Part shown: positions 913-63,821 of the stretch, in pieces
How positions within the stretch are numbered: the first letter of the stretch is position 1
Layout: every line of letters starts with the position of its first letter
Origin: Macrostomum lignano
Taxonomy: Eukaryota
NCBI GenBank assembly: GCA_002269645.1
Contig: NIVC01000186.1
Span: 186,001-250,000, forward strand
DNA length: 64,000 nt
Direction: 5' to 3'
The notes under the pieces: model-generated
The model's input: only the letters and a program-made list of their open reading frames with translations
The model's database searches: none
What the model was told of the DNA's origin: nothing
Translations under genes and position numbers: made by a program

Positions 913-1719
913 TAGATTCGATTTCGCTCAAAACAAGAAAAACACAAGAGATAAGAGATAAGACTCCAGACTATAAGCAGTAAAGCAAACGCACACAGGA
1001 GAGTAAATTAAATGCAAGTAGTCAGATAGGAAGCGCCTCTCGTTTTATTCGTGCTTTTCTGGGGGTTGGTGGGCGGTGGGGTGGGTTGGATTTCCATTTC
1101 AGGTCCATGCAGTCCAGTCACACCAAAAACACCATTTATCGTCTTCACAGCACAAAAAGGGGTGTTGGGGTTGGTCTATGTACAGCGGTCCCACCCTTTA
1201 CTTTTCTGTCCTATTTATGGCAGGCCCGCGCGCGACAGAAAAAAAGCCAGCCGCCCAGCTATTAAACCCCAAAGACGGCTCATATGTACATCGGCCGCCC
1301 CCCGTGCGTGTTGTAATCGAGAGCAAAGAGACAATCATTCCATGTACTTAGATTGCTGCCTACATTCAGCGTCCAACTAATGCTAATATAACAGACTAGA
1401 CATACTAATGTATAGTTAAAGAATTGCAGAAAGCATCAGTCCCACTAAATACTAATGATATAATGACTAACGCTTAACAGTCATCCAGATTGAAAACGTA
1501 CAGTCTATTAAATGGCCCAGTAAAATTTTTATTGAGATTATTGAGCTTCACAGATCACAGTCCATTTTTTATTTTCTTATATGAATACTATTTATTAAGC
1601 TTGCTTTTTAAACAAAACCCAAAATGTTAATTGAAGCATAAAAGCATGCTAATTGCTGGCGAGTAGAGACAACTGGCTAGCAACTTGATATCTAGCTGAG
1701 CAGTGATTTTACAGAGAAA

Positions 1720-3276
1720 GGGGATGTCAACTTAAGCACCAGAATGGAGCCCGAAGTTCAGCTCCGGACCAAACCGACTGCAATCGATAACTTGTCGGCC
1801 CAGACGACTAGAATCGCCGAGACATCCCATCCGGCTCCCTTCCTTGGGGTCCCAGGGGATAAAGGGGATAAAATGGGGATCTCATGTCAACTTAAGGCTC
1901 TGGAATGGAGCCCGAAGTTCAGCTCCGGACCAAACCGACTGCAATCGATAACTTGTCGGCCCAGACGACTAGAATCGCCGAGACATCCCATCCGGCTCCC
2001 TTCCTTGGGGTCCCAGGGGATAAAGGGGATAAAATGGGGATCTCATGTCAACTTAAGGCTCTGGAATGGAGCCCGAAGTTCAGCTCCGGACCAAACCGAC
2101 TGCAATCGATAACTTGTCGGCCCAGACGACTAGAATCGCCGAGACATCCCATCCGGCTCCCTTCCTTGGGGTCCCAGGGGATAAAGGGGATAAAATGGGG
2201 ATCTCATGTCAACTTAAGGCTCTGGAATGGAGCCCGAAGTTCAGCTCCGGACCAAACCGACTGCAATCGATAACTTGTCGGCCCAGACGACTAGAATCGC
2301 CGAGACATCCCATCCGGCTCCCTTCCTTGGGGTCCCAGGGGATAAAGGGGATAAAATGGGGATCTCATGTCAACTTAAGGCTCTGGAATGGAGCCCGAAG
2401 TTCAGCTCCGGACCAAACCGACTGCAATCGATAACTTGTCGGCCCAGACGACTAGAATCGCCGAGACATCCCATCCGGCTCCCTTCCTTGGGGTCCCAGG
2501 GGATAAAGGGGATAAAATGGGGATCTCATGTCAACTTAAGGCTCTGGAATGGAGCCCGAAGTTCAGCTCCGGACCAAACCGACTGCAATCGATAACTTGT
2601 CGGCCCAGACGACTAGAATCGCCGAAACATCCCATCCGGCTCCCTTCCTTGGGGTCCCAGGGGATAAAGGGGATAAAATGGGGATCTCATGTCAACTTAA
2701 GGCTCTGGAATGGAGCCCGAAGTTCAGCTCCGGACCAAACCGACTGCAATCGATAACTTGTCGGCCCAGACGACTAGAATCGCCGAGACATCCCATCCGG
2801 CTCCCTTCCTTGGGGTCCCAGGGGATAAAGGGGATAAAATGGGGATCTCATGTCAACTTAAGGCTCTGGAATGGAGCCCGAAGTTCAGCTCCGGACCAAA
2901 CCGACTGCAATCGATAACTTGTCGGCCCAGACGACTAGAATCGCCGAGACATCCCATCCGGCTCCCTTCCTTGGGGTCCCAGGGGATAAAGGGGATAAAA
3001 TGGGGATCTCATGTCAACTTAAGGCTCTGGAATGGAGCCCGAAGTTCAGCTCCGGACCAAACCGACTGCAATCGATAACTTGTCGGCCCAGACGACTAGA
3101 ATCGCCGAGACATCCCATCCGGCTCCCTTCCTTGGGGTCCCAGGGGATAAAGGGGATAAAATGGGGATCTCATGTCAACTTAAGGCTCTGGAATGGAGCC
3201 CGAAGTTCAGCTCCGGACCAAACCGACTGCAATCGATAACTTGTCGGCCCAGACGACTAGAATCGCAGAGACATCC
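1720..3276 (+). repeat. 161-bp tandem array, about 9.5 copies (left TIR)
   Basis: Identical ORF starts at 1744, 1905 ... 3032 give a 161-bp spacing. Among the full units I see a single variant (G>A at 2626). Confidence 0.98.
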
Positions 3277-3333
3277 GCTGTGCCACTATGTCCCGCTATG
3301 TGCTGCTTTGCTGCCATTAAGCAGGACTAATGT

Positions 3334-4260
3334 GTGAACGAGAGGCACAAACCGTATCAGTGGCTGCCGTCAGCCGGCTTCAGTGAGCCCACCCGATTAG
3401 ACGTTGTTATCGAGACCTCGATGGCAAAGTACAACCGGGCGCATCCAGGTTTTGAATCATTTAAACAGCTGCCACCGTCATGGACAGGGCTATCGTTGTT
3501 CGAATTCGGTCAGAATTTCATGCGCCGAGTGCTCTTGTCCAACGAACTGGACGAAATTGAGCAGCTGCACTTCAACTGTGATCTGAAGCGTGCCCCCCTG
3601 CTAACACAAAGGCATGGATTGCTGTCAACCCGCTGGATCCAAAAAGCTCGGGGTTCCCCCGAATTTACACAGTGAATTTGTCAGAGGTTTCGGTGGATCC
3701 GTATCAACTAAATCAAGCCGATTATTACATTCAAAACATTCGTGTCAAGGAGGTTCTCGGTAGCTACGAAGGTGACTCCTGGAGAGACTTTGAGTTACAC
3801 ATCCGAGCCGCCGGGAGTATTGGAAGTTTCGGCAAGAGACGCCGCTAGAAAACTGGAGCAACCTACTCGGTCGGTGGCATCCGTCTTGGATTTTTCTAGC
3901 TGTCGTTTTCTCGCGCCATGATTCGAAATCCTACCGCGTGATTCTTAGAGTGTGTGACAGCAGCGGACAATCGCTTTGGTTTTAGAGATCCAGGATTGCA
4001 ACTTCTTCATGGCTACTACTCATCAGCAAAAGCTGGAAGTAGGACTGCAGGCCGCCATTGTCATGAAATGGCAGTGCTCAAACTCCTGGGCTGCTACGCT
4101 TACCACCAAGATAGCTATCGAAGGTCTGGTGCTAGCCTTCGCTTTGTTGATTCCGCTCTTCCACGCAGTCTTGTTGCCAGACTTTATGCCAGAGAAAATG
4201 CTTTACCACAGCAGCGGAAGCCGACTGAGCAACCGTCTAGCGGCCAGCAAGAGGAGTTTC
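3334..4260 (+). pseudogene. Decayed C-terminal fragment of a PHIS/Spy-type transposase (degenerate SWIM-like region)
   Basis: Motifs lie in three frames: GFPRIYTVNLSEVSVDPYQLNQADYY (about 3651-3728), FSRHDSKSYRVIL (3908-3946) and LHGYYSSAKAGSRTAGRHCHEMAVLKLLGCYAYHQ (about 4005-4110). They resemble the FP..L..YQL..A..Y, SRH..K.Y and GYYCTCK.G.RT.G.C.H..VL..LG motifs I recall from DDE_Tnp_4/SWIM transposases. At least 3 frameshifts; no DDE core present. Confidence 0.6.
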
Positions 4261-4265
4261 AGTCA

Positions 4266-4717
4266 CCCCAAGGAAGGGAGCCGGATGGGATGTCTCGGCG
4301 ATTCTAGTCGTCTGGGCCGACAAGTTATCGATTGCAGTCGGTTTGGTCCGGAGCTGAACTTCGGGCTCCATTCCAGAGCCTTAAGTTGACATGAGATCCC
4401 CATTTTATCCCCTTTATCCCCTGGGACCCCAAGGAAGGGAGCCGGATGGGATGTCTCGGCGATTCTAGTCGTCTGGGCCGACAAGTTATCGATTGCAGTC
4501 GGTTTGGTCCGGAGCTGAACTTCGGGCTCCATTCCAGAGCCTTAAGTTGACATGAGATCCCCATTTTATCCCCTTTATCCCCTGGGACCCCAAGGAAGGG
4601 AGCCGGATGGGATGTCTCGGCGATTCTAGTCGTCTGGGCCGACAAGTTATCGATTGCAGTCGGTTTGGTCCGGAGCTGAACTTCGGGCTCCATTCTGGTG
4701 CTTAAGTTGACATCCCC
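4266..4717 (-). repeat. 161-bp tandem array, about 2.7 copies, inverted (right TIR)
   Basis: Same unit on the minus strand, with starts at 4693, 4532 and 4371. Confidence 0.98.
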
Positions 4718-6435
4718 TTTCCAGCCAAGCGCGTGACACAACCTTTCCTTGGCCGAAGGTCATTAATTATTTGCGTAAAAAGTGTCGGCTGGAATTTCGT
4801 TGTTGCGTCTAATACAAGTGCTTCTGATGAGCCGCATTTTTAGAGTTCGGAATAATTGGAAATGGCGCATTTTTAATTGCGTACCTTATAAAATTCGATA
4901 TTACAAGTATAACAAAAAGCAACTCGAATCTATCGAGTTTTTGTCTAAAATAAGAAACGATTAAATAAATTTTATTTTCATTTTTCAAATTCTCCGTCGG
5001 CATTGCAGGCTCTCAAGTACGTCTCTGTAGGTTATATAATACCTGGGCGTATATATTTATGCAAATGGCTATTATTGCTTAGGTATTGCTGCTAATATAT
5101 AGCTAATAGCAATTTTATGCGTCGTCTTGATATAAAATCAGGTGTAAAAAAACAATAACTATTGTAGCAACTTGAATGAAAAAAGATAATACACGATTAA
5201 TAATTTTAATTAGTAATGCACTAATAAACATTTCGTAATACAATTCAGTAGACTATTAAAAGGGACGAAATCACATTAATTAAATCCTGAAAGTTTATTA
5301 CAGAACCAAGTTAATAAATTGAACTAAAAAGTACAAAAAAACGGACCCAATGGCTGTGTAGTTAGTTATAAACATTTTAATTGTCAATAAGACTATAGAG
5401 TTGGCTGGCACTGGGCGTTCAGTCCAAATGGGGGCTAAGTACACGCTTATAATTAAAGTAGTAATAATAAGTTGCAATTAATTAATTGTTGACTCAGTCC
5501 AGAAGTATTGATTATAGCCAGTTTAGCCAATATAATATATAGCTGCAGCAGAAGTTTCAATGGCAACGATTTTACAAAGCACAATAACTGACATAGCATT
5601 TGGAATATAATTAAGTCACAGATTGACATGATTACGAGCTGCCCCTGTGCAATAAAGACAAGAATTTACCATTTACCAGTCCTCGAATTCGTATAGTATT
5701 GATTAGCACGGAACAGATCTTAGCAAAAGAATATTACTATCGGCAATTAGTGAGTCAACACAAACATTATAGCATATATATATATAAATGAAAAAGATAT
5801 TCACCTTGGATAACAGGTAGCGAGGCAATTAAAAATCAATACAAGCATACAATACTAAAAAGCGTAGAAAAGCATATTCATCGAAATACGACACGAGAGG
5901 ATTATACTAAATTAGGCATTGATCTCAAGCCCTAGCAATTATTGCATTTCTCAACCAATCAGATTCGTGCACGTCATTAGCTCCGTTAAATGTACATGAA
6001 TGTACATTGAAATCCTTATTCTCTCACCTTGAAGCCCAGCTATTGGTAAAGCAAAAAGTATCAGCTCTGATTAGCTGATTGGTGTGAAATGTACTGTGTG
6101 GGCTGGGTGAGTACTCGGTACTCGTTTGATTTTCTTTCCTAGAAATTTCAGAAAACCAACTTTCAAAAGTGATTTTTCTCGTTGAAGATTAAGAAAGAAG
6201 CTGCACAGATCAGTATTCTGTAGTCACTACTCGATCAACCCTGGTTAGACTACTCGGTACTCGATATTCGAGGTCACTGAACCAATATTCACCCAGCCCT
6301 GTCTGCCCACCCACTCGCCACGACTTTTCCCATCCGAACCATTGAAATTCAAGTTGGCGCATTTTAATTGGCTACCAGGCTGAGCCTCCGCTACAGTTGG
6401 ACTTGAAGAGCCAATCAGAACAGAGTCCAAAGTGG

Positions 6436-28331
<21,896 letters not shown>

Positions 28332-29334: not shown

Positions 29335-29585
29335 GGCCCAGCAACTGAGGACCTGGGAGGCTGGCCCAGCAACTGAGGATCTGGGAGGCTGGCCCAGCAA
29401 CTGAGGATCTGGGAGGCTGGCCCAGCAACTGAGGATCTGGGAGGCTGGCCCAGCAACTGAGGATCTGGGAGGCTGGCCCAGCAACTGAGGATCTGGGAGG
29501 CTGGCCCAGCAACTGAGGACCTGGGAAGCTGGCCCAGTAACTGAGGATCTGGGTGGGAGGCTGGCCCAGCAACTGAGGATCTGGT
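29335..29585. repeat. 28-bp minisatellite (CCCAGCAACTGAGGATCTGGGAGGCTGG)n, block 1
   Basis: About 9 copies. Confidence 0.93.
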
Positions 29586-30074
29586 GATATTTCACTTTAA
29601 TGTTGCTTTCATCAGCAATTTTCCCCAAGACTGATTTATCCCCAGTCAGTCGGAGAAAGGATGCCAAGGTCATTGCCCTGGCTCCTGGTCCAACAGCTTT
29701 GCAGCTGGGGCTGCCTACATGCAGTTACCCAACGTAGCAGCCACTGCACGCACTGGGACACGGGCGCCCCCACTGGGTGAATCATGTTTCGGGGAATCCG
29801 CTAATCCCGTCCTCCCCTACCAGCTCCTTCCCTTTCAAGCATTAGTCAGCATCGCTAAGCAAGAATGGAGGCCTAATTAAGCCAAAAAAACTATCGATTG
29901 AAGCCTGCAATATCCTACTAATGAGTAAGTAGTGCACAGCGGAAATTGCACTGCAAATTTTTGTTTTGGTAGTAAACTTTATTGAAAAATAGTACAATTT
30001 CTTGAGCTGATTTTTGCTTGGCAACAATTTTAGACAGATGGAGTATACCATTTATTTATAGTAGACGTAGAGTA

Positions 30075-31420
30075 GGGAAGGGAGGTAGAGTGGGGGAGGG
30101 AGGTAGAGTGGGGGAGGGAGGTAGAGTGGGGGAGGGAGGTAGAGTGGGGGAGGGAGGTAGAGTGGGGGAGGGAGGTAGAGTGGGGAGGGAGGTAGAGTGG
30201 GGAGGGAGGCAGAGTGGGGGAGGGAGGTATAGTGGGGGAGGGAGGTAGAGTGGGGAGGGAGGTAGAGTGGGGGAGGAGGTATAGTGGGGGAGGGAGGTAG
30301 AGTGGGGAGGGAGGTAGAGTGGGGGAGGGAGGTAGAGTGGGGGAGGGAGGTAGAGTGGGGGAGGGAGGTAGAGTGGGGAGGGAGGTAGAGTGGGGAGGGA
30401 GGCAGAGTGGGGGAGGGAGGTATAGTGGGGAGGGAGGCAGAGTGGGGGAGGGAGGTATAGTGGGGGAGGGAGGTACAGTGGGGGAGGGAGGTAGAGTGGG
30501 GAGGGAGGTAGAGTGGGGAGGGAGGCAGAGTGGGGGAGGGAGGTATAGTGGGGAGGGAGGTAGAGTGGGGAGGGAGGTAGAGTGGGGAGGGAGGTATAGT
30601 GGGGGAGGGAGGTATAGTGGGGGAGGGAGGCAGAGTGGGGGAGGGAGGTATAGTGGGGGAGGGAGGCAGAGTGGGGGAGGGAGGTATAGTGGGGGAGGGA
30701 GGTATAGTGGGGGAGGGAGGTAGAGTGGGGGAGGGAGGTAGAGTGGGGGAGGGAGGTAGAGTGGGGGAGGGAGGTAGAGTGGGGGAGGGAGGTATAGTGG
30801 GGGAGGGAGGTAGAGTGGGGAGGGAGGTAGAGTGGGGGAGGGAGGTATAGTGGGGGAGGGAGGTAGAGTGGGGAGGGAGGTAGAGTGGGGGAGGGAGGTA
30901 GAGTGGGGGAGGGAGGTAGAGTGGGGAGGGAGGTAGAGTGGGGAGGGAGGTAGAGTGGGGAGGGAGGCAGAGTGGGGGAGGAGGTATAGTGGGGAGGGAG
31001 GCAGAGTGGGGGAGGGAGGTATAGTGGGGGAGGGAGGTACAGTGGGGGAGGGAGGTAGAGTGGGGAGGGAGGTAGAGTGGGGAGGGAGGCAGAGTGGGGG
31101 AGGGAGGTATAGTGGGGGAGGGAGGTAGAGTGGGGAGGGAGGTAGAGTGGGGAGGGAGGTATAGTGGGGGAGGGAGGTATAGTGGGGGAGGGAGGCAGAG
31201 TGGGGGAGGGAGGTATAGTGGGGAGGGAGGCAGAGTGGGGAGGGAGGTATAGTGGGGAGGGAGGTATAGTGGGGGAGGGAGGTAGAGTGGGGGAGGGAGG
31301 TAGAGTGGGGAGGGAGGTAGAGTGGGGGAGGGAGGTAGAGTGGGGGAGGGAGGTAGAGTGGGGGAGGGAGGTAGAGTGGGGGAGGGAGGTAGAGTGGGGA
31401 GGGAGGTAGAGTGGGGCAGG
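30075..31420. repeat. 17/18-bp G-rich minisatellite (GGGGGAGGGAGGTAGAGT)n
   Basis: About 75 copies, almost purine-only on the + strand. Confidence 0.96.
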
Positions 31421-32104
31421 GAGTTACAGGGGACACAGCAATGGATACACAGAAAGATGGACAGTCGGACTCAAGGCAATAAAAAAATCGGTGGCAGGAA
31501 CTCTCAGGCCCAGTTGCTGGGATAAACCGCATGCACTATTAATAAAACCTTCGAGTCACTAAATTTAAAAGCACCCCAGCTGGCGTAAGACAGAAACAGC
31601 AAGCCTCCAGTGGATATATCTGATTCAAATTAAAGTCCTGATGCGTTTCTCAGGGGAGAATAAAACTTATTTATAAACCATGCCGCACAAGAATGGCTGA
31701 AGTTTAGCTGTTGCCAGGTCAGGAAAGGGTGACTCAGTGCCTTCCTGCCCTCTATCTGCCGTCACCTCTCTCAGCTGTTGGCAATAGCAATTCAGATCCA
31801 TGCAGCATGGCAGACTGAGAAACACGGACGGATCTAAAATCGATAAATACCGCCAGATCCGCGGTCTGGCTTTGGGATCCCGGAGGTGGGGAGAAGCAAT
31901 GGGGAATAGGGGACCGGAGCTGTGGATTTCCCCATTGATTTATGGCGCTGAGGTTCGCGGACTCAAAGAGCTTCTCTCGGCCTGTTTGGCTGTCAGCCTT
32001 TAAGCCTGTGTCACGTGACCACTGTTATTGGTTTCTCAACTAATGACCTTGTTGAGTCACGGCGGGTCAGAGTTCCTCGGTTGCTGGGACTTGACGGCTT
32101 GGAT

Positions 32105-32575
32105 GGCTGGGAGGCTGGCCCGGCAACCATGAGGATCTGGGAGGCTGGCCTGGCAACCATGGGGATCTGGGAGGCTGGCCCGGCAACCATGGGGATCTGG
32201 GAGGCTGGCCCAGTAACTGAGGATCTGGGAGGCTGGCCCAGTAACTGAGGATCTGGGAGGCTGGCCCAGTAACTGAGGATCTGGGAGGCTGGCTCAGTAA
32301 CTGAGGATCTGGGAGGCTGGCCCAGTAACTGAGGATCTGGGAGGCTGGCCCAGTAACTGAGGATCTGGGAGGCTGGCCCAGTAACTGAGGATCTGGGAAG
32401 CTGGCCCAGCAACCATGGGGATCTGGGAGGCTGGCCTGGCAACCATGGGGATCTGGGAGGCTGGCCCAGTAACTGAGGATCTGGGAGGCTGGCCCAGCAA
32501 CTGAGGATCTGGGAGGCTGGTGGCTTAGCAACTGAGGATCTGGGAGACTGGCCCAGCAACTGAGGATCTGAGAGG
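32105..32575. repeat. 28-bp minisatellite, block 2 (same family as 29335-29585)
   Basis: Same unit and orientation, plus a CAACCATGGGGATCTGGG variant. Confidence 0.93.
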
Positions 32576-33293
32576 GTGGCTGTCTACCTGCTAACAAAAA
32601 TAGAATTAAAGAAAAAATCTTCTTCTCAAGCGCAGAGTTTCACTTACAAAAGAACTGCGGTCTACTTGGCAATAACAGAAAGAGCCGAGTTGAATCCACA
32701 GGAAAGACGCAGCCAATCTTGTCAAAATAATGCTTGCCAATTTCGTTTAAAACTAATTTTCAGTAGCGTCAGAGATTGATGGAGAGCGGAGACTGACTTT
32801 GAAAGCCAGGCCGCGCTTTACCCAGCAGTGGGGATAGAGAGCCTATGGCTAAAAGTTGAATTTCAGGTCAGCAATTCAGGCCTGACTCTGGGGAAGGGCT
32901 GGGTTTGTTGGTCCAGCTTGACCGGAGATGGCTCGGCAGATATTAAAATAGCTGCGATAGTGCCGTATGCGGCATATTCCGACCGCTGCTTAACCCACCG
33001 CGGATCGGCAAAGTTAGCGCAGCCCCCAGTGTGCAGCTAACTAGTCAGTAAGTAAATTTATGGCTGACTGTGGATGCGACAGTCACTGTGCAGAAATTAT
33101 TGATGCCAAAACTGCATTTGGAGGCCTGACTGACTGACTGACCGGTCAGGGAGCATTCATTTTTTATTAGAATATGGCGCCTAAATAGGGAGACTTGATG
33201 AAGCCAGGAAAGGAGTTTGGGTAGCGATGTTTGATTAGGGATAATTTATGAGTTTGGTACATTAAAACAAAGTATAGGTGCGAAAACAGGCGA

Positions 33294-38042: not shown

Positions 38043-38364
38043 TTAGAGGATGTGTGCACCCTGGCGAACTTTAAGCGACATTGTCACACAACCGGCGAGA
38101 GGCATTACTGCCCATTCCACAGACTCCCCTGAGCAGGCACACAAGCGCGCGGATACGTACGCAGTCATACGCACAGGCACACACTCACACAGGAGTGTAC
38201 AGCGGCCCTAACTTTATTTATCGTTAGGCATGTACACTTCCCTGCGCCTTGGGGGTTGGCCCAAGCCGAGATTCCAATTCAGCCCCAAATTAATGTGACT
38301 GCACTTGGAACTGAACCTGGGCCGCTGGCACATCAGAGAACTGGGCCAGACTTCTGGGCTACGG
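38043..38364 (-). mobile_element. Second copy of tRNA-derived SINE A
   Basis: Reverse complement of most of 7268-7617, with small indels. No poly(A) or TSD seen. Confidence 0.85.

Positions 38365-41194: not shown

Positions 41195-63821
<22,627 letters not shown>

What the first reader, a model, noticed from the sequence alone, without database searches (positions are those of the whole stretch)
1720..4717. Spy-like transposon whose terminal inverted repeats have become 161-bp satellite arrays
Seen: exact inverted termini GGGGATGTCAACTTAAG.../...CTTAAGTTGACATCCCC, flanked by AAA on the left and TTT on the right with no TSD, so the empty site would read GAGAAA|TTTTCC. About 9.5 versus 2.7 copies of a 161-bp unit face each other across about 990 bp. 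Established: Spy elements (PIF/Harbinger-ISL2EU-Spy group) insert into AAATTT without a TSD, and foldback elements such as Drosophila FB and Tetris carry tandem repeats in their TIRs that can seed satellites. Inference: this is a non-autonomous Spy family with foldback architecture. I do not know of that combination being described, and it may be a satellite in the process of forming.
Basis: partly seen in the sequence, partly recalled or inferred. Interest (0 to 1): 0.82.

Follow-up and report, generated by a model that had tools for sequence, protein, structure and literature searches.

The report
Dead Spy-like transposon with tandem-repeat ends

Summary
Window 1720-4717 is a 2,998-bp element with 9.6 versus 2.8 inverted copies of a 161-bp unit, identical 18-nt termini, AAA...TTT flanks and no TSD. 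The 988-bp "spacer" is not anonymous. Positions 3279-3853 are the pseudogenised 3' third of a transposase gene. Full-length or near-full relatives (P0124 on contig L001; L002) carry HTH_Tnp_4 and DDE_Tnp_4-type motifs, which mark the PHIS superfamily. L001 has the same terminus (15/17) upstream of its gene, again preceded by AAA. No PHIS-type TSD (TWA, AT, ANT, CWG, TNA) fits, so only the TSD-less AAA|TTT (Spy-type) reading works. Three Macrostomum lignano gene models run through other copies that share the same deletion junctions, so this is a dispersed non-autonomous family. Only the outermost units keep the conserved terminus; internal units carry a 5-bp insertion in it. Still open: no empty site or second complete copy could be examined, so AAA/TTT could belong to the TIR. 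The transposase spacing D(93)D(80)E, a C2H2 finger and the flatworm host lie outside described Spy, and no phylogeny was possible. Verdict: a new variant of a known kind, of moderate interest.

The parts
1717..1719 (+). AAA abutting the left terminus: a candidate half of an AAA|TTT target site, or else the outermost TIR bases
   Evidence: Read directly. AAA also precedes the conserved terminus in L001, whereas the bases further out differ at all three ends (ACAGAG, GGCTGG, GCGCTT).
1720..1737 (+). Left terminal core GGGGATGTCAACTTAAGC, the presumed transposase recognition and cleavage end
   Evidence: Exact mirror of 4700-4717. It matches L001 position 102 at 15/17, upstream of a full-length transposase gene. 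Chance expectation is 4.5e-4 analytically, and 1 of 3000 shuffles gave a hit.
1720..1874 (+). Left outermost unit, a 155-bp terminal variant
   Evidence: Lacks the CTCAT insertion and has CACCAG instead of GCTCTGG compared with internal units.
1875..3162 (+). Eight full internal 161-bp units, each with a disrupted copy of the terminus (GGGGAT-CTCAT-GTCAACTTAAG) and three GGGGAT sub-motifs
   Evidence: TRF period 161, 99% matches. One SNP among the eight units.
3163..3276 (+). Last, truncated left unit (114 bp), ending at the internal-deletion breakpoint
   Evidence: The same junction peptide (RRLESQRHPLCHYVPLCAALLPLSRT / IAETSAVPLC) appears in M. lignano models P0123 and P0001.
3279..3853 (+). 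Pseudogenised 3' third of a PHIS-type transposase gene. It runs from about 12 codons before the catalytic E motif to the native C-terminus and has one stop (TAA 3328-3330), two frameshifts, an ~8-nt loss covering the VVE codons, and the native stop mutated to TGG (3854-3856)
   Evidence: tblastn of P0124: aa 340-479, 471-537 and 544-560 map to 3220-3621, 3594-3794 and 3803-3853 (44-59% identity, E 4e-32 and 1.5e-19). blastn gives 69% identity to L002 over 3272-3751. Breakpoint alignment. phmmer hits.
3854..4264 (+). 3' untranslated region of the former transposase gene, running up to the right array
   Evidence: blastn homology to L001 continues past its stop codon (window 3307-4111 aligns with L001 2022-2840, 61%). 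No Pfam or Rfam signal.
4265..4562 (-). Right array: an innermost truncated unit (137 bp, 4265-4401) plus one full internal unit (4402-4562)
   Evidence: The spacer/right-array junction peptide (SFSxPKEGSRMGCLG) is retained in P0001.
4563..4717 (-). Right outermost unit (155-bp terminal variant) ending in the terminal core at 4700-4717
   Evidence: Identical to the left terminal unit.
4718..4720 (+). TTT abutting the right terminus, the second half of the candidate AAA|TTT target
   Evidence: Read directly.

Best explanation
Window 1720-4717 is a non-autonomous, internally deleted copy of a cut-and-paste DNA transposon of the PHIS superfamily (DDE_Tnp_4/HTH_Tnp_4-type transposase), in the genome of Macrostomum lignano or a close relative. 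Shown: the middle region is the dead 3' third of the element's own transposase gene plus its 3' UTR. The terminal inverted repeats are arrays of a 161-bp unit (9.6 left, 2.8 right). Only the outermost unit on each side carries the intact 18-nt terminus, which is conserved in a distant relative that encodes a full-length transposase; every internal unit has a 5-bp insertion in that motif. The same deletion derivative occurs at other loci. There is no target-site duplication, and the ends abut AAA and TTT. Inferred: a trans-acting transposase of this lineage binds the terminal or subterminal GGGGAT-containing motifs, cuts at the outermost units, and inserts the element between AAA and TTT without duplicating the target, as Spy transposases do. 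The unit arose by duplication of the terminal ~155 bp. One variant unit then amplified locally by unequal exchange or replication slippage, which explains 99.9% identity within the locus against about 5-7% amino-acid divergence between loci, and the unequal arm lengths.
For: (1) Transposase remnant: phmmer with the spacer ORF finds full-length P0124 (560 aa) and P0125. tblastn of P0124 covers window 3220-3853 in three frames. DNA identity is 69% to L002 and 61% to L001, extending into the 3' UTR. (2) PHIS assignment: the L002 translation hits HTH_Tnp_4 above Pfam's cut-off (31.9 bits against 27, E 1e-7). DDE_Tnp_4 is the only DDE family hit, on the N-terminal motif in P0124 (E 0.0016) and the C-terminal motif in L003 (E 0.0018). 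P0124 fits the published PHIS signature as D-(22)-K-(32)-D-(37)-D...P-(19)-R-(3)-E. (3) Terminus: L001 has AAA|GAGGATGTCAACTTAGG 798 bp upstream of its ATG, 15/17 identical to the window terminus, with chance about 4.5e-4. (4) Target: there is no TSD at any offset and none of the TWA, AT, ANT, CWG or TNA types fits. AAA is present at 3 of 3 ends and TTT at the one right end. Functional Spy ends in the literature read AAA|GGGCCTGG, AAA|GGACCCCG and similar. (5) Architecture: L001 has a single long ORF, and the window leaves only 410 bp between the transposase stop and the right array. (6) Dispersal: P0001, P0123 and P0002 (M. lignano or same-batch UniParc entries) contain the unit, spacer and both junctions, while their other exons are absent from the window. 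(7) The element has 51-55% GC in 36-40% GC flanks.
Against: Only one complete insertion and one extra end were available, and no empty site. AAA/TTT could therefore be the outermost TIR bases: the inverted repeat extends to G1716/C4721, and AAAGGGGAT recurs inside every unit. The DDE_Tnp_4 hits are below Pfam's curated threshold. The catalytic spacing D(93)D(80)E and the C2H2 finger differ from described Spy, and the terminus GGGGATGT is not GGANNNNG. Spy surveys report only Arthropoda, Cnidaria and Mollusca (plus rotifers in 2014), and a PHIS survey that screened three flatworm genomes lists none. The species assignment rests on transposon matches, because a host CAPS exon found no near-identical protein. 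The organisms behind L001 (a JGI metagenome) and L002 (an SRA run) are unknown. No autonomous copy from the same genome was seen. The structure model was unusable.
Confidence: 0.7

Rival explanations
1. It is the same PHIS-type deletion derivative, but the true termini are (G)AAAGGGG...CCCCTTT(C). On this reading AAA/TTT belong to the TIR, the target is not AAATTT, and the lineage inserts without a detectable TSD or with one lost here.
For: The inverted repeat is perfect out to 1716/4721. AAAGGGGAT occurs within every unit. AAA is also conserved next to the terminus in L001, as a TIR base would be. The Spy authors faced the same ambiguity and needed empty sites to settle it.
Against: With those boundaries there is still no 2-3 bp TSD (GAG vs CCA, AG vs CC), which no described PHIS group other than Spy shows. 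The base outside AAA is G, G and T at the three ends, so conservation stops exactly at AAA. Experimentally verified Spy ends look the same, AAA|GG....
Confidence: 0.2
2. It is a NuwaI-type PHIS element that made a 3-bp CWG duplication: TTTTA[CAG]A-GAAAGGGG...CCCCTTTC[CAG]CCAAG.
For: CAG directly abuts the full inverted repeat on the right, and lies one base away on the left. NuwaI makes 5'-CWG-3' TSDs and its TIRs usually start GGG.
Against: It needs an unpaired extra A at the left end. The chance of such a CWG pair within one base of slack is about 4e-3, no better than the rival readings. L001 has no CWG next to its terminus (GCGCTT|AAAGAGG). NuwaI elements have two ORFs, including a Myb/SANT protein, and L001 shows only one.
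Confidence: 0.03
3. It is a classical foldback element of the FB/Tetris (Mutator-like) kind, unrelated to PHIS.
For: The architecture matches Tetris: long unequal TIRs built of ~160-220-bp tandem units, and a middle domain with no intact ORF.
Against: There is no 8-10 bp TSD, even a degraded one. The middle domain is homologous to an HTH_Tnp_4/DDE_Tnp_4-type transposase gene. There is no unique flanking domain outside the repeats.
Confidence: 0.02
4. It is not a mobile element but a local inverted duplication of a satellite block, or an assembly or chimeric-read foldback.
For: The arms are 100% identical and the units 99.9% identical, as collapsed or duplicated assemblies can be.
Against: The spacer and flanks are not mirrored. 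Terminal-specific variants sit exactly at both ends. The same junctions occur in independent M. lignano gene models from other loci. The terminus is conserved in L001. The element's GC content differs from its flanks.
Confidence: 0.02

Closest known systems
Spy transposons (PHIS superfamily; Han et al. 2014, PMC4122938; cgSpy, PMC11304231)
   Same: The ends abut AAA and TTT with no TSD. Relatives have a single-ORF transposase with an N-terminal HTH and a DDE_Tnp_4-like core ending in R(3)E. The TIR starts GGG, like the active cgSpy (AAA|GGGCCTGG). Long TIRs occur in Spy (up to 1,474 bp), and non-autonomous deletion derivatives dominate Spy families.
   Different: The TIRs here are tandem arrays of a 161-bp unit, whereas long Spy TIRs were reported to have no apparent subrepeat structure. 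The catalytic spacing is D(93)D(80)E against D(79-80)D(44-62)E. There is an N-terminal C2H2 finger, and most Spy transposases have no zinc finger. The terminus is GGGGATGT (GAGGATGT in L001), not GGANNNNG. The host is a flatworm-type genome, outside the reported range. Clade membership by phylogeny was not tested.
Tetris and FB foldback elements of Drosophila (Dias et al. 2014, PMC4079207)
   Same: Non-autonomous. Long TIRs made of tandem repeats of similar size (about 220 bp in Tetris), with unequal copy number in the two arms. A non-functional middle domain. The repeat unit shares sequence with the terminus. Proposed to seed satellite arrays.
   Different: Tetris has 8-10 bp TSDs, a unique flanking domain (up to 866 bp) outside the repeats, and a suggested Mutator affiliation. 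Here the arrays start at the very terminus, there is no TSD, and the middle domain is a PHIS transposase remnant.
Other PHIS groups: PIF/Harbinger, ISL2EU, Pangu, NuwaI, NuwaII (Han et al. 2015, PMC4482050)
   Same: An HTH_Tnp_4 plus DDE_Tnp_4-type transposase signature, and TIRs beginning with G or GG.
   Different: These groups make TSDs (TWA, AT, ANT, CWG, TNA), none of which fits here. Most autonomous copies carry a second ORF (Myb/SANT or YqaJ), and none is seen in L001.
Galileo (P superfamily foldback-like element of Drosophila buzzatii), as cited in PMC4079207
   Same: Tandem repeats inside long TIRs that carry extra transposase-binding sites. This is a functional analogy for the repeated GGGGAT-containing units.
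   Different: It has a THAP-domain P-type transposase and makes a TSD (7 bp, from my own knowledge). There is no sequence or superfamily relationship.

Membership tests
PHIS superfamily (PIF/Harbinger-ISL2EU-Spy) | The transposase has a DDE_Tnp_4-type catalytic core with the signature D(19-29)K(29)D(18-40)D(11-19)P(18-28)R(3)E | tested here: met
   On relatives of the window's remnant. P0124 reads D197-(22)-K-(32)-D253-(37)-D291-(56)-P348-(19)-R368-(3)-E372. It fits except for a ~40-aa insertion after D291 and a 3-residue offset in K-D. DDE_Tnp_4 is the only DDE Pfam family hit (E 0.0016 and 0.0018, sub-threshold, on complementary parts of the model in two relatives). The window itself keeps only the part from the E motif onward.
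PHIS superfamily (PIF/Harbinger-ISL2EU-Spy) | An HTH DNA-binding domain upstream of the catalytic core | tested here: met
   HTH_Tnp_4 (PF13613) scores 31.9 bits against a cut-off of 27 in the L002 translation, and E 2e-4 in P0124.
Spy group | Insertion between AAA and TTT with no target-site duplication | tested here: inconclusive
   Both window ends and the L001 left end abut AAA/TTT, and no TSD exists at any offset. Without an empty site, AAA/TTT cannot be told apart from TIR bases, and only one complete insertion was available.
Spy group | A single long ORF encoding the transposase, with no second ORF | tested here: met
   L001 has one 560-aa ORF and nothing else longer than 117 aa. In the window only 410 bp separate the former stop codon from the right array. 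The extreme 3' end of L001 is missing.
Spy group | Catalytic spacing D(79-80)D(44-62)E | tested here: not met
   The spacing is D(93)D(80)E in P0124, conserved in L002. The catalytic residues were assigned by motif (IGDHTY, FDRGY, RFAVE), not by structure.
Spy group | Terminal TIR consensus 5'-GGANNNNG-3' (described as 'relatively well conserved') | tested here: not met
   GGGGATGT in the window and GAGGATGT in L001. However, experimentally active Spy ends also deviate (GGGCCTGG, GAGCCAAG, TCGGGATT), so this feature discriminates weakly.
Spy group | The transposase falls in the Spy clade in a DDE-core phylogeny | not testable with these tools
   No Spy, ISL2EU or Harbinger reference sequences could be retrieved.
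NuwaI group | 5'-CWG-3' target-site duplication | tested here: not met
   CAG...CAG exists only with a 1-nt irregularity in the window and is absent next to the L001 terminus.
PIF/Harbinger, ISL2EU, Pangu, NuwaII groups | TSDs of TWA, AT (in A|AT|T), ANT or TNA respectively | tested here: not met
   No matching 2-3 bp direct repeat at boundary offsets 0-4.
Foldback elements (structural class: FB, Tetris) | Long TIRs composed of tandem repeats around a short middle domain with no intact ORF | tested here: met
Mutator-type foldbacks (FB/Tetris) | 8-10 bp target-site duplication | tested here: not met
   The best 6-12 bp candidate (TTTACAG/TTTCCAG) is no better than random position pairs.

The most novel reading that the evidence does not exclude
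The element and its relatives (P0124/L001, L002, the distant L003) represent an undescribed PHIS lineage, either within Spy or sister to it. Its marks are a C2H2-finger transposase with an enlarged catalytic core. It inserts without a TSD at AAA|TTT and has been recently mobile in macrostomid flatworms, a phylum where Spy has not been reported. Its TIRs have turned into satellite-like arrays in which only the outermost unit keeps a competent end. That would be the first tandem-repeat or foldback TIR architecture in the PHIS superfamily, and a possible source of 161-bp satellite DNA.
Probability: 0.4. Interest if true: 0.65.

Novelty: new variant of a known kind. Interest (0 to 1): 0.5.

Why it matters
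If genome-wide flanks and empty sites confirm it, three things follow. TSD-less, AAATTT-specific transposition would extend to Platyhelminthes and to a divergent transposase architecture. Foldback or tandem-repeat TIRs, so far tied mainly to Mutator- and P-type elements, would be shown to arise in the PHIS superfamily too. And there would be a clean natural example in which repeat units carry a disabled copy of the transposon end while the outermost units keep the working one, which bears on how transposon ends seed satellites without destabilising the element. There is also practical interest. Spy transposases are being developed as scarless gene-transfer tools, and Macrostomum lignano is the one flatworm with routine transgenesis, so an endogenous relative with known ends is worth knowing about. 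The copy in this window is itself dead and ordinary in its local effect. Separately, it contaminates at least three M. lignano gene models (P0001, P0002, P0123).

Tried and rejected
- Exact look-ups of window ORFs and of P0001/P0002 in the gene-position index: nothing on record.
- Pattern scans for the unit and terminus in metagenome, GTDB-genome and viral collections: no hits, apart from one chance 18-mer inside a phage coding sequence.
- The search for related loci with P0124 in viral contigs: none.
- A second concatenated protein query covering all other frames and the opposite strand: no hits.
- Pfam on all spacer frames taken alone: nothing. The homology only appeared with the exhaustive phmmer search.
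- Rfam on the element: nothing.
- Folding the unit: no better than shuffled sequence, z = -0.78.
- NCBIfam and PDB sequence searches with P0124: no transposase hits.
- AlphaFold2 on P0124 alone: pLDDT 31, so I did not interpret it or run a fold search.
- Species confirmation with a host CAPS exon: best hit only 61% identical.
- Paralogous empty sites within the window: the flanks are unique there.
- A second inverted array pair (19-mer, 17360-17397 vs 18177-19418): different termini and flanks, so not the same family.
- L003: a distant intron-containing homologue with no matching terminus.
- The supplements of the Spy and PHIS papers hold no TIR or protein sequences usable for a phylogeny.
Full report
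OBSERVATION. The feature is real and sits at the stated coordinates. GGGGATGTCAACTTAAG occurs exactly at 1720-1736 and as its reverse complement at 4701-4717, and nowhere else in the window with fewer than 3 mismatches (0.18 matches expected with up to 3 mismatches). Tandem Repeats Finder reports a 161-bp array at 1724-3276 (9.7 copies, 99% matches) and the inverted array at 4265-4713 (2.8 copies). The arms are 100% complementary over 457 nt. The arrays are 988 bp apart. The flanks are AAA (1717-1719) and TTT (4718-4720).

Four details refine the description.
- The inverted repeat runs 4 nt further out, to G1716/C4721.
- The outermost unit on each side is a 155-bp variant, GGGGAT-GTCAACTTAAGCACCAG, of the internal GGGGATCTCATGTCAACTTAAGGCTCTGG. 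It is mirrored exactly at both ends.
- The eight complete internal units differ by one SNP.
- The arrays end asymmetrically on the inside, at unit position 114 on the left and 137 on the right.

A systematic search found no target-site duplication. The only exact 3-mer next to the inverted repeat is CAG, and it needs a 1-nt irregularity. The best degraded 6-12-mer (TTTACAG/TTTCCAG) is no better than random position pairs.

WHAT THE SPACER IS. Taken alone, the spacer's reading frames hit nothing in Pfam, the element hits nothing in Rfam, and the unit does not fold better than shuffled sequence. An exhaustive phmmer search with the 113-aa spacer ORF (3334-3675) then found six proteins. Among them:
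- P0124, a full-length 560-aa protein on a 3,023-bp JGI metagenome contig (L001);
- P0125, on a Logan contig (L002);
- P0127, on an ENA contig (L003).

tblastn of P0124 against the window aligns aa 340-479, 471-537 and 544-560 to 3220-3621, 3594-3794 and 3803-3853, in three different frames (E 4e-32 and 1.5e-19). At the DNA level, L002 is 69% identical over window 3272-3751. L001 is 61% identical over 3307-4111, which runs past the transposase stop codon into the 3' UTR. The junction alignment puts the breakpoint at about 3277-3279, roughly 12 codons upstream of the catalytic glutamate motif. It also shows that the window copy has lost about 8 nt covering the VVE codons. There is an in-frame TAA at 3328-3330, and the native stop has become TGG at 3854-3856. 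The "spacer" is therefore the dead 3' third of the element's own transposase gene plus its 3' UTR. The element is an internal-deletion derivative.

SUPERFAMILY. P0124 has a weak N-terminal C2H2 finger and a sub-threshold HTH_Tnp_4 hit at E 2e-4. Its only DDE-family hit is DDE_Tnp_4, at E 0.0016 on profile positions 12-53. Two replicates on diverged relatives strengthen this. The conceptual translation of L002 (46-59% identical to P0124) hits HTH_Tnp_4 above Pfam's curated cut-off, at 31.9 bits against 27 (E 1e-7). The L003 fragment hits the C-terminal part of DDE_Tnp_4 (profile 94-137, E 0.0018). That C-terminal motif is exactly where the window remnant begins.

Against the PHIS-wide signature published by Han et al., D(19-29)K(29)D(18-40)D(11-19)P(18-28)R(3)E, P0124 reads D197-(22)-K-(32)-D253-(37)-D291-(56)-P348-(19)-R368-(3)-E372. 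It fits except for a ~40-aa insertion after the second catalytic D and a 3-residue offset in K-D. I consider the PHIS assignment well supported, at about 0.85-0.9. The AlphaFold2 model from a single sequence was unusable (pLDDT 31). PDB and NCBIfam gave no transposase matches.

THE ENDS. In L001, 798 bp upstream of the transposase ATG, the sequence reads ...GCGCTTAAA|GAGGATGTCAACTTAGGCC.... That is 15/17 identical to the window terminus, in the orientation expected for a left end. It is the only such match in the contig, with chance about 4.5e-4 analytically and 1 hit in 3000 shuffles. When the three available ends are aligned, identity starts at AAA, and the bases further out differ (ACAGAG, GGCTGG, GCGCTT). 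Beyond about 21 nt the two families are unalignable, so this block is under constraint and is the functional terminus. Only the outermost 161-bp-type units carry it intact. Every internal unit has CTCAT inserted into it. My inference is that internal units are poor or incompetent ends, which would let the array grow without creating competing cleavage sites.

TARGET SITE AND GROUP. PHIS groups are defined by their TSDs: TWA, AT, ANT, CWG, TNA, or none at AAA|TTT for Spy. I tested all boundary offsets from 0 to 4. No 2- or 3-bp direct repeat exists, so none of the TSD-making groups fits and only the TSD-less AAA|TTT reading works. The CAG...CAG (NuwaI-like) alternative needs an unpaired base and is absent next to the L001 terminus. 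L001 has one long ORF, and the window leaves only 410 bp between the stop codon and the right array. That is Spy-like, not the two-ORF layout of Harbinger, ISL2EU and Nuwa. Cloning primers for functionally tested Spy elements give real ends: AAA|GGGCCTGG (cgSpy), AAA|GGACCCCG, AAA|GGACAATG, AAA|GAGCCAAG and AAA|TCGGGATT. AAA|GGGGATGT falls within that spread.

Several points count against filing it as Spy.
- AAA/TTT cannot be told apart from TIR bases without an empty site. The Spy authors had the same problem. AAAGGGGAT also occurs inside each unit.
- The catalytic spacing D(93)D(80)E is outside D(79-80)D(44-62)E.
- A C2H2 finger is atypical for Spy.
- The GGANNNNG motif is not met.
- Spy has been reported only from arthropods, cnidarians and molluscs (plus rotifers in 2014). 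A PHIS survey that screened Schistosoma and Schmidtea lists no flatworm family.

My conclusion is that it works like Spy (about 0.65), and that membership of the Spy clade is untested.

DISPERSAL AND HOST. A concatenated query of the element's ORFs hit two Macrostomum lignano UniProt models.
- P0001 runs through the last left unit, the spacer and the first right unit, at 87% identity over the aligned stretches (about 95% outside a 13-residue gap), and keeps both junction-specific peptides.
- P0002 uses one diverged unit (33/35 aa) as its first exon.
- P0123, a UniParc entry from the same accession batch, found, contains the same left junction peptide. At some positions it keeps more ancestral residues than the window copy.

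The other exons of these models are absent from the window. One caveat is that only 1.7 kb lies upstream of the element in the window. All three models carry the same deletion breakpoint, so one deletion derivative arose and then spread. The element is 51-55% GC in 36-40% GC flanks.

The host is Macrostomum lignano or a close relative. That rests on the transposon matches and on the extreme tandem-repeat load: 46.7% of the window, against 13% reported genome-wide. A host CAPS exon found nothing above 61% identity. The M. lignano papers I could read do not mention this family.

MECHANISM. Shown: a dead, internally deleted PHIS-type transposon with tandem-repeat TIRs, conserved outermost ends and no TSD, present at several loci. 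Inferred:
- It is mobilised in trans by a P0124-type transposase that recognises the terminal or subterminal GGGGAT-containing motifs and inserts between AAA and TTT.
- The 161-bp unit arose by duplication of the terminal ~155 bp.
- One variant unit amplified locally by unequal exchange or slippage. That accounts for 99.9% identity within the locus against about 5-7% amino-acid divergence between loci, and for the 9.6 versus 2.8 asymmetry.

The closest structural analogue is Tetris/FB, which differs in having 8-10 bp TSDs, a unique flanking domain and a presumed Mutator affiliation.

VERDICT. Novelty: a new variant of a known kind. Interest is about 0.5. Whole-genome flank tabulation, empty sites and a transposase phylogeny would settle the open points.

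Noticed in passing
window 17360-17397 and 18177-19418: A second foldback-like arrangement: 2 copies of a 19-mer (GGAGGGGTGGTGGCTAGGA) face about 66 inverted copies across roughly 780 bp. The termini and flanks (ACACCT|GGAGGGG...CCCCTCC|TTGCAG) are unrelated to the 161-bp element, with no AAA/TTT and no TSD.
   Followed up: partly
window 1-64000: Tandem repeats cover about 47% of the window: dozens of unrelated mini- and microsatellite arrays with periods of 4-272 bp. That is far above the ~13% reported genome-wide for M. lignano. Most lie inside the introns of the host genes.
   Followed up: partly
window 11558-16364 (+): A nearly intact non-LTR retrotransposon. It has an ORF1 (329 aa, no Pfam hit), an endonuclease ORF (Exo_endo_phos_2) and an overlapping RT + RNase H ORF (813 aa). 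ORF2 is split into two overlapping frames at about 13923-14025.
   Followed up: partly
window 23807-27262: A 2.6-kb pure (CTAT)n microsatellite (654 copies) is interrupted by 2.8 copies of a 272-bp unit (99% identical), and then (CTAT)n resumes. This could be an insertion or amplification inside a microsatellite.
   Followed up: no
window 6436-6786 (-) and 27867-28331 (-): A DUF4139 exon and a DUF4140 exon lie on the same strand more than 20 kb apart. They probably belong to one gene whose intron holds the LINE and many satellites. The transposon lies about 1.7 kb beyond the DUF4139 exon, between it and a calponin-homology exon (94-336, -).
   Followed up: partly
window 45758-46294 (-) and 50234-50890 (-): MUN-domain and PH-domain exons of a CAPS/CADPS-like gene. 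The best database identity for the PH exon is only 61%, so no near-identical protein from this organism is in the 5.8-billion-protein collection.
   Followed up: partly
window 29335-29584, 30067-31423 and 32107-32580: Two direct arrays of the same 28-mer (GGCCCAGCAACTGAGGATCTGGGAGGCT) flank an unrelated 18-mer array. This looks like a composite repeat structure of unknown origin.
   Followed up: no
window 7267-7598 vs 38053-38364: An inverted pair of a roughly 330-bp dispersed repeat, 81% identical and unrelated to the element.
   Followed up: no
L003 187-1029 (ENA ERZ25072293 contig, 27% GC): A distant homologue of the transposase in an AT-rich eukaryote. It contains introns and has F in place of the second catalytic D (IFFRGY) while keeping the R(3)E motif. 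It may be a domesticated or decaying copy.
   Followed up: partly
P0001, P0002, P0123 (Macrostomum lignano gene models): Three public gene models are chimeras that splice fragments of this transposon (unit, dead transposase) onto LINE, BTB-Kelch, THAP or PRP4-like exons. These are annotation artefacts worth flagging.
   Followed up: partly
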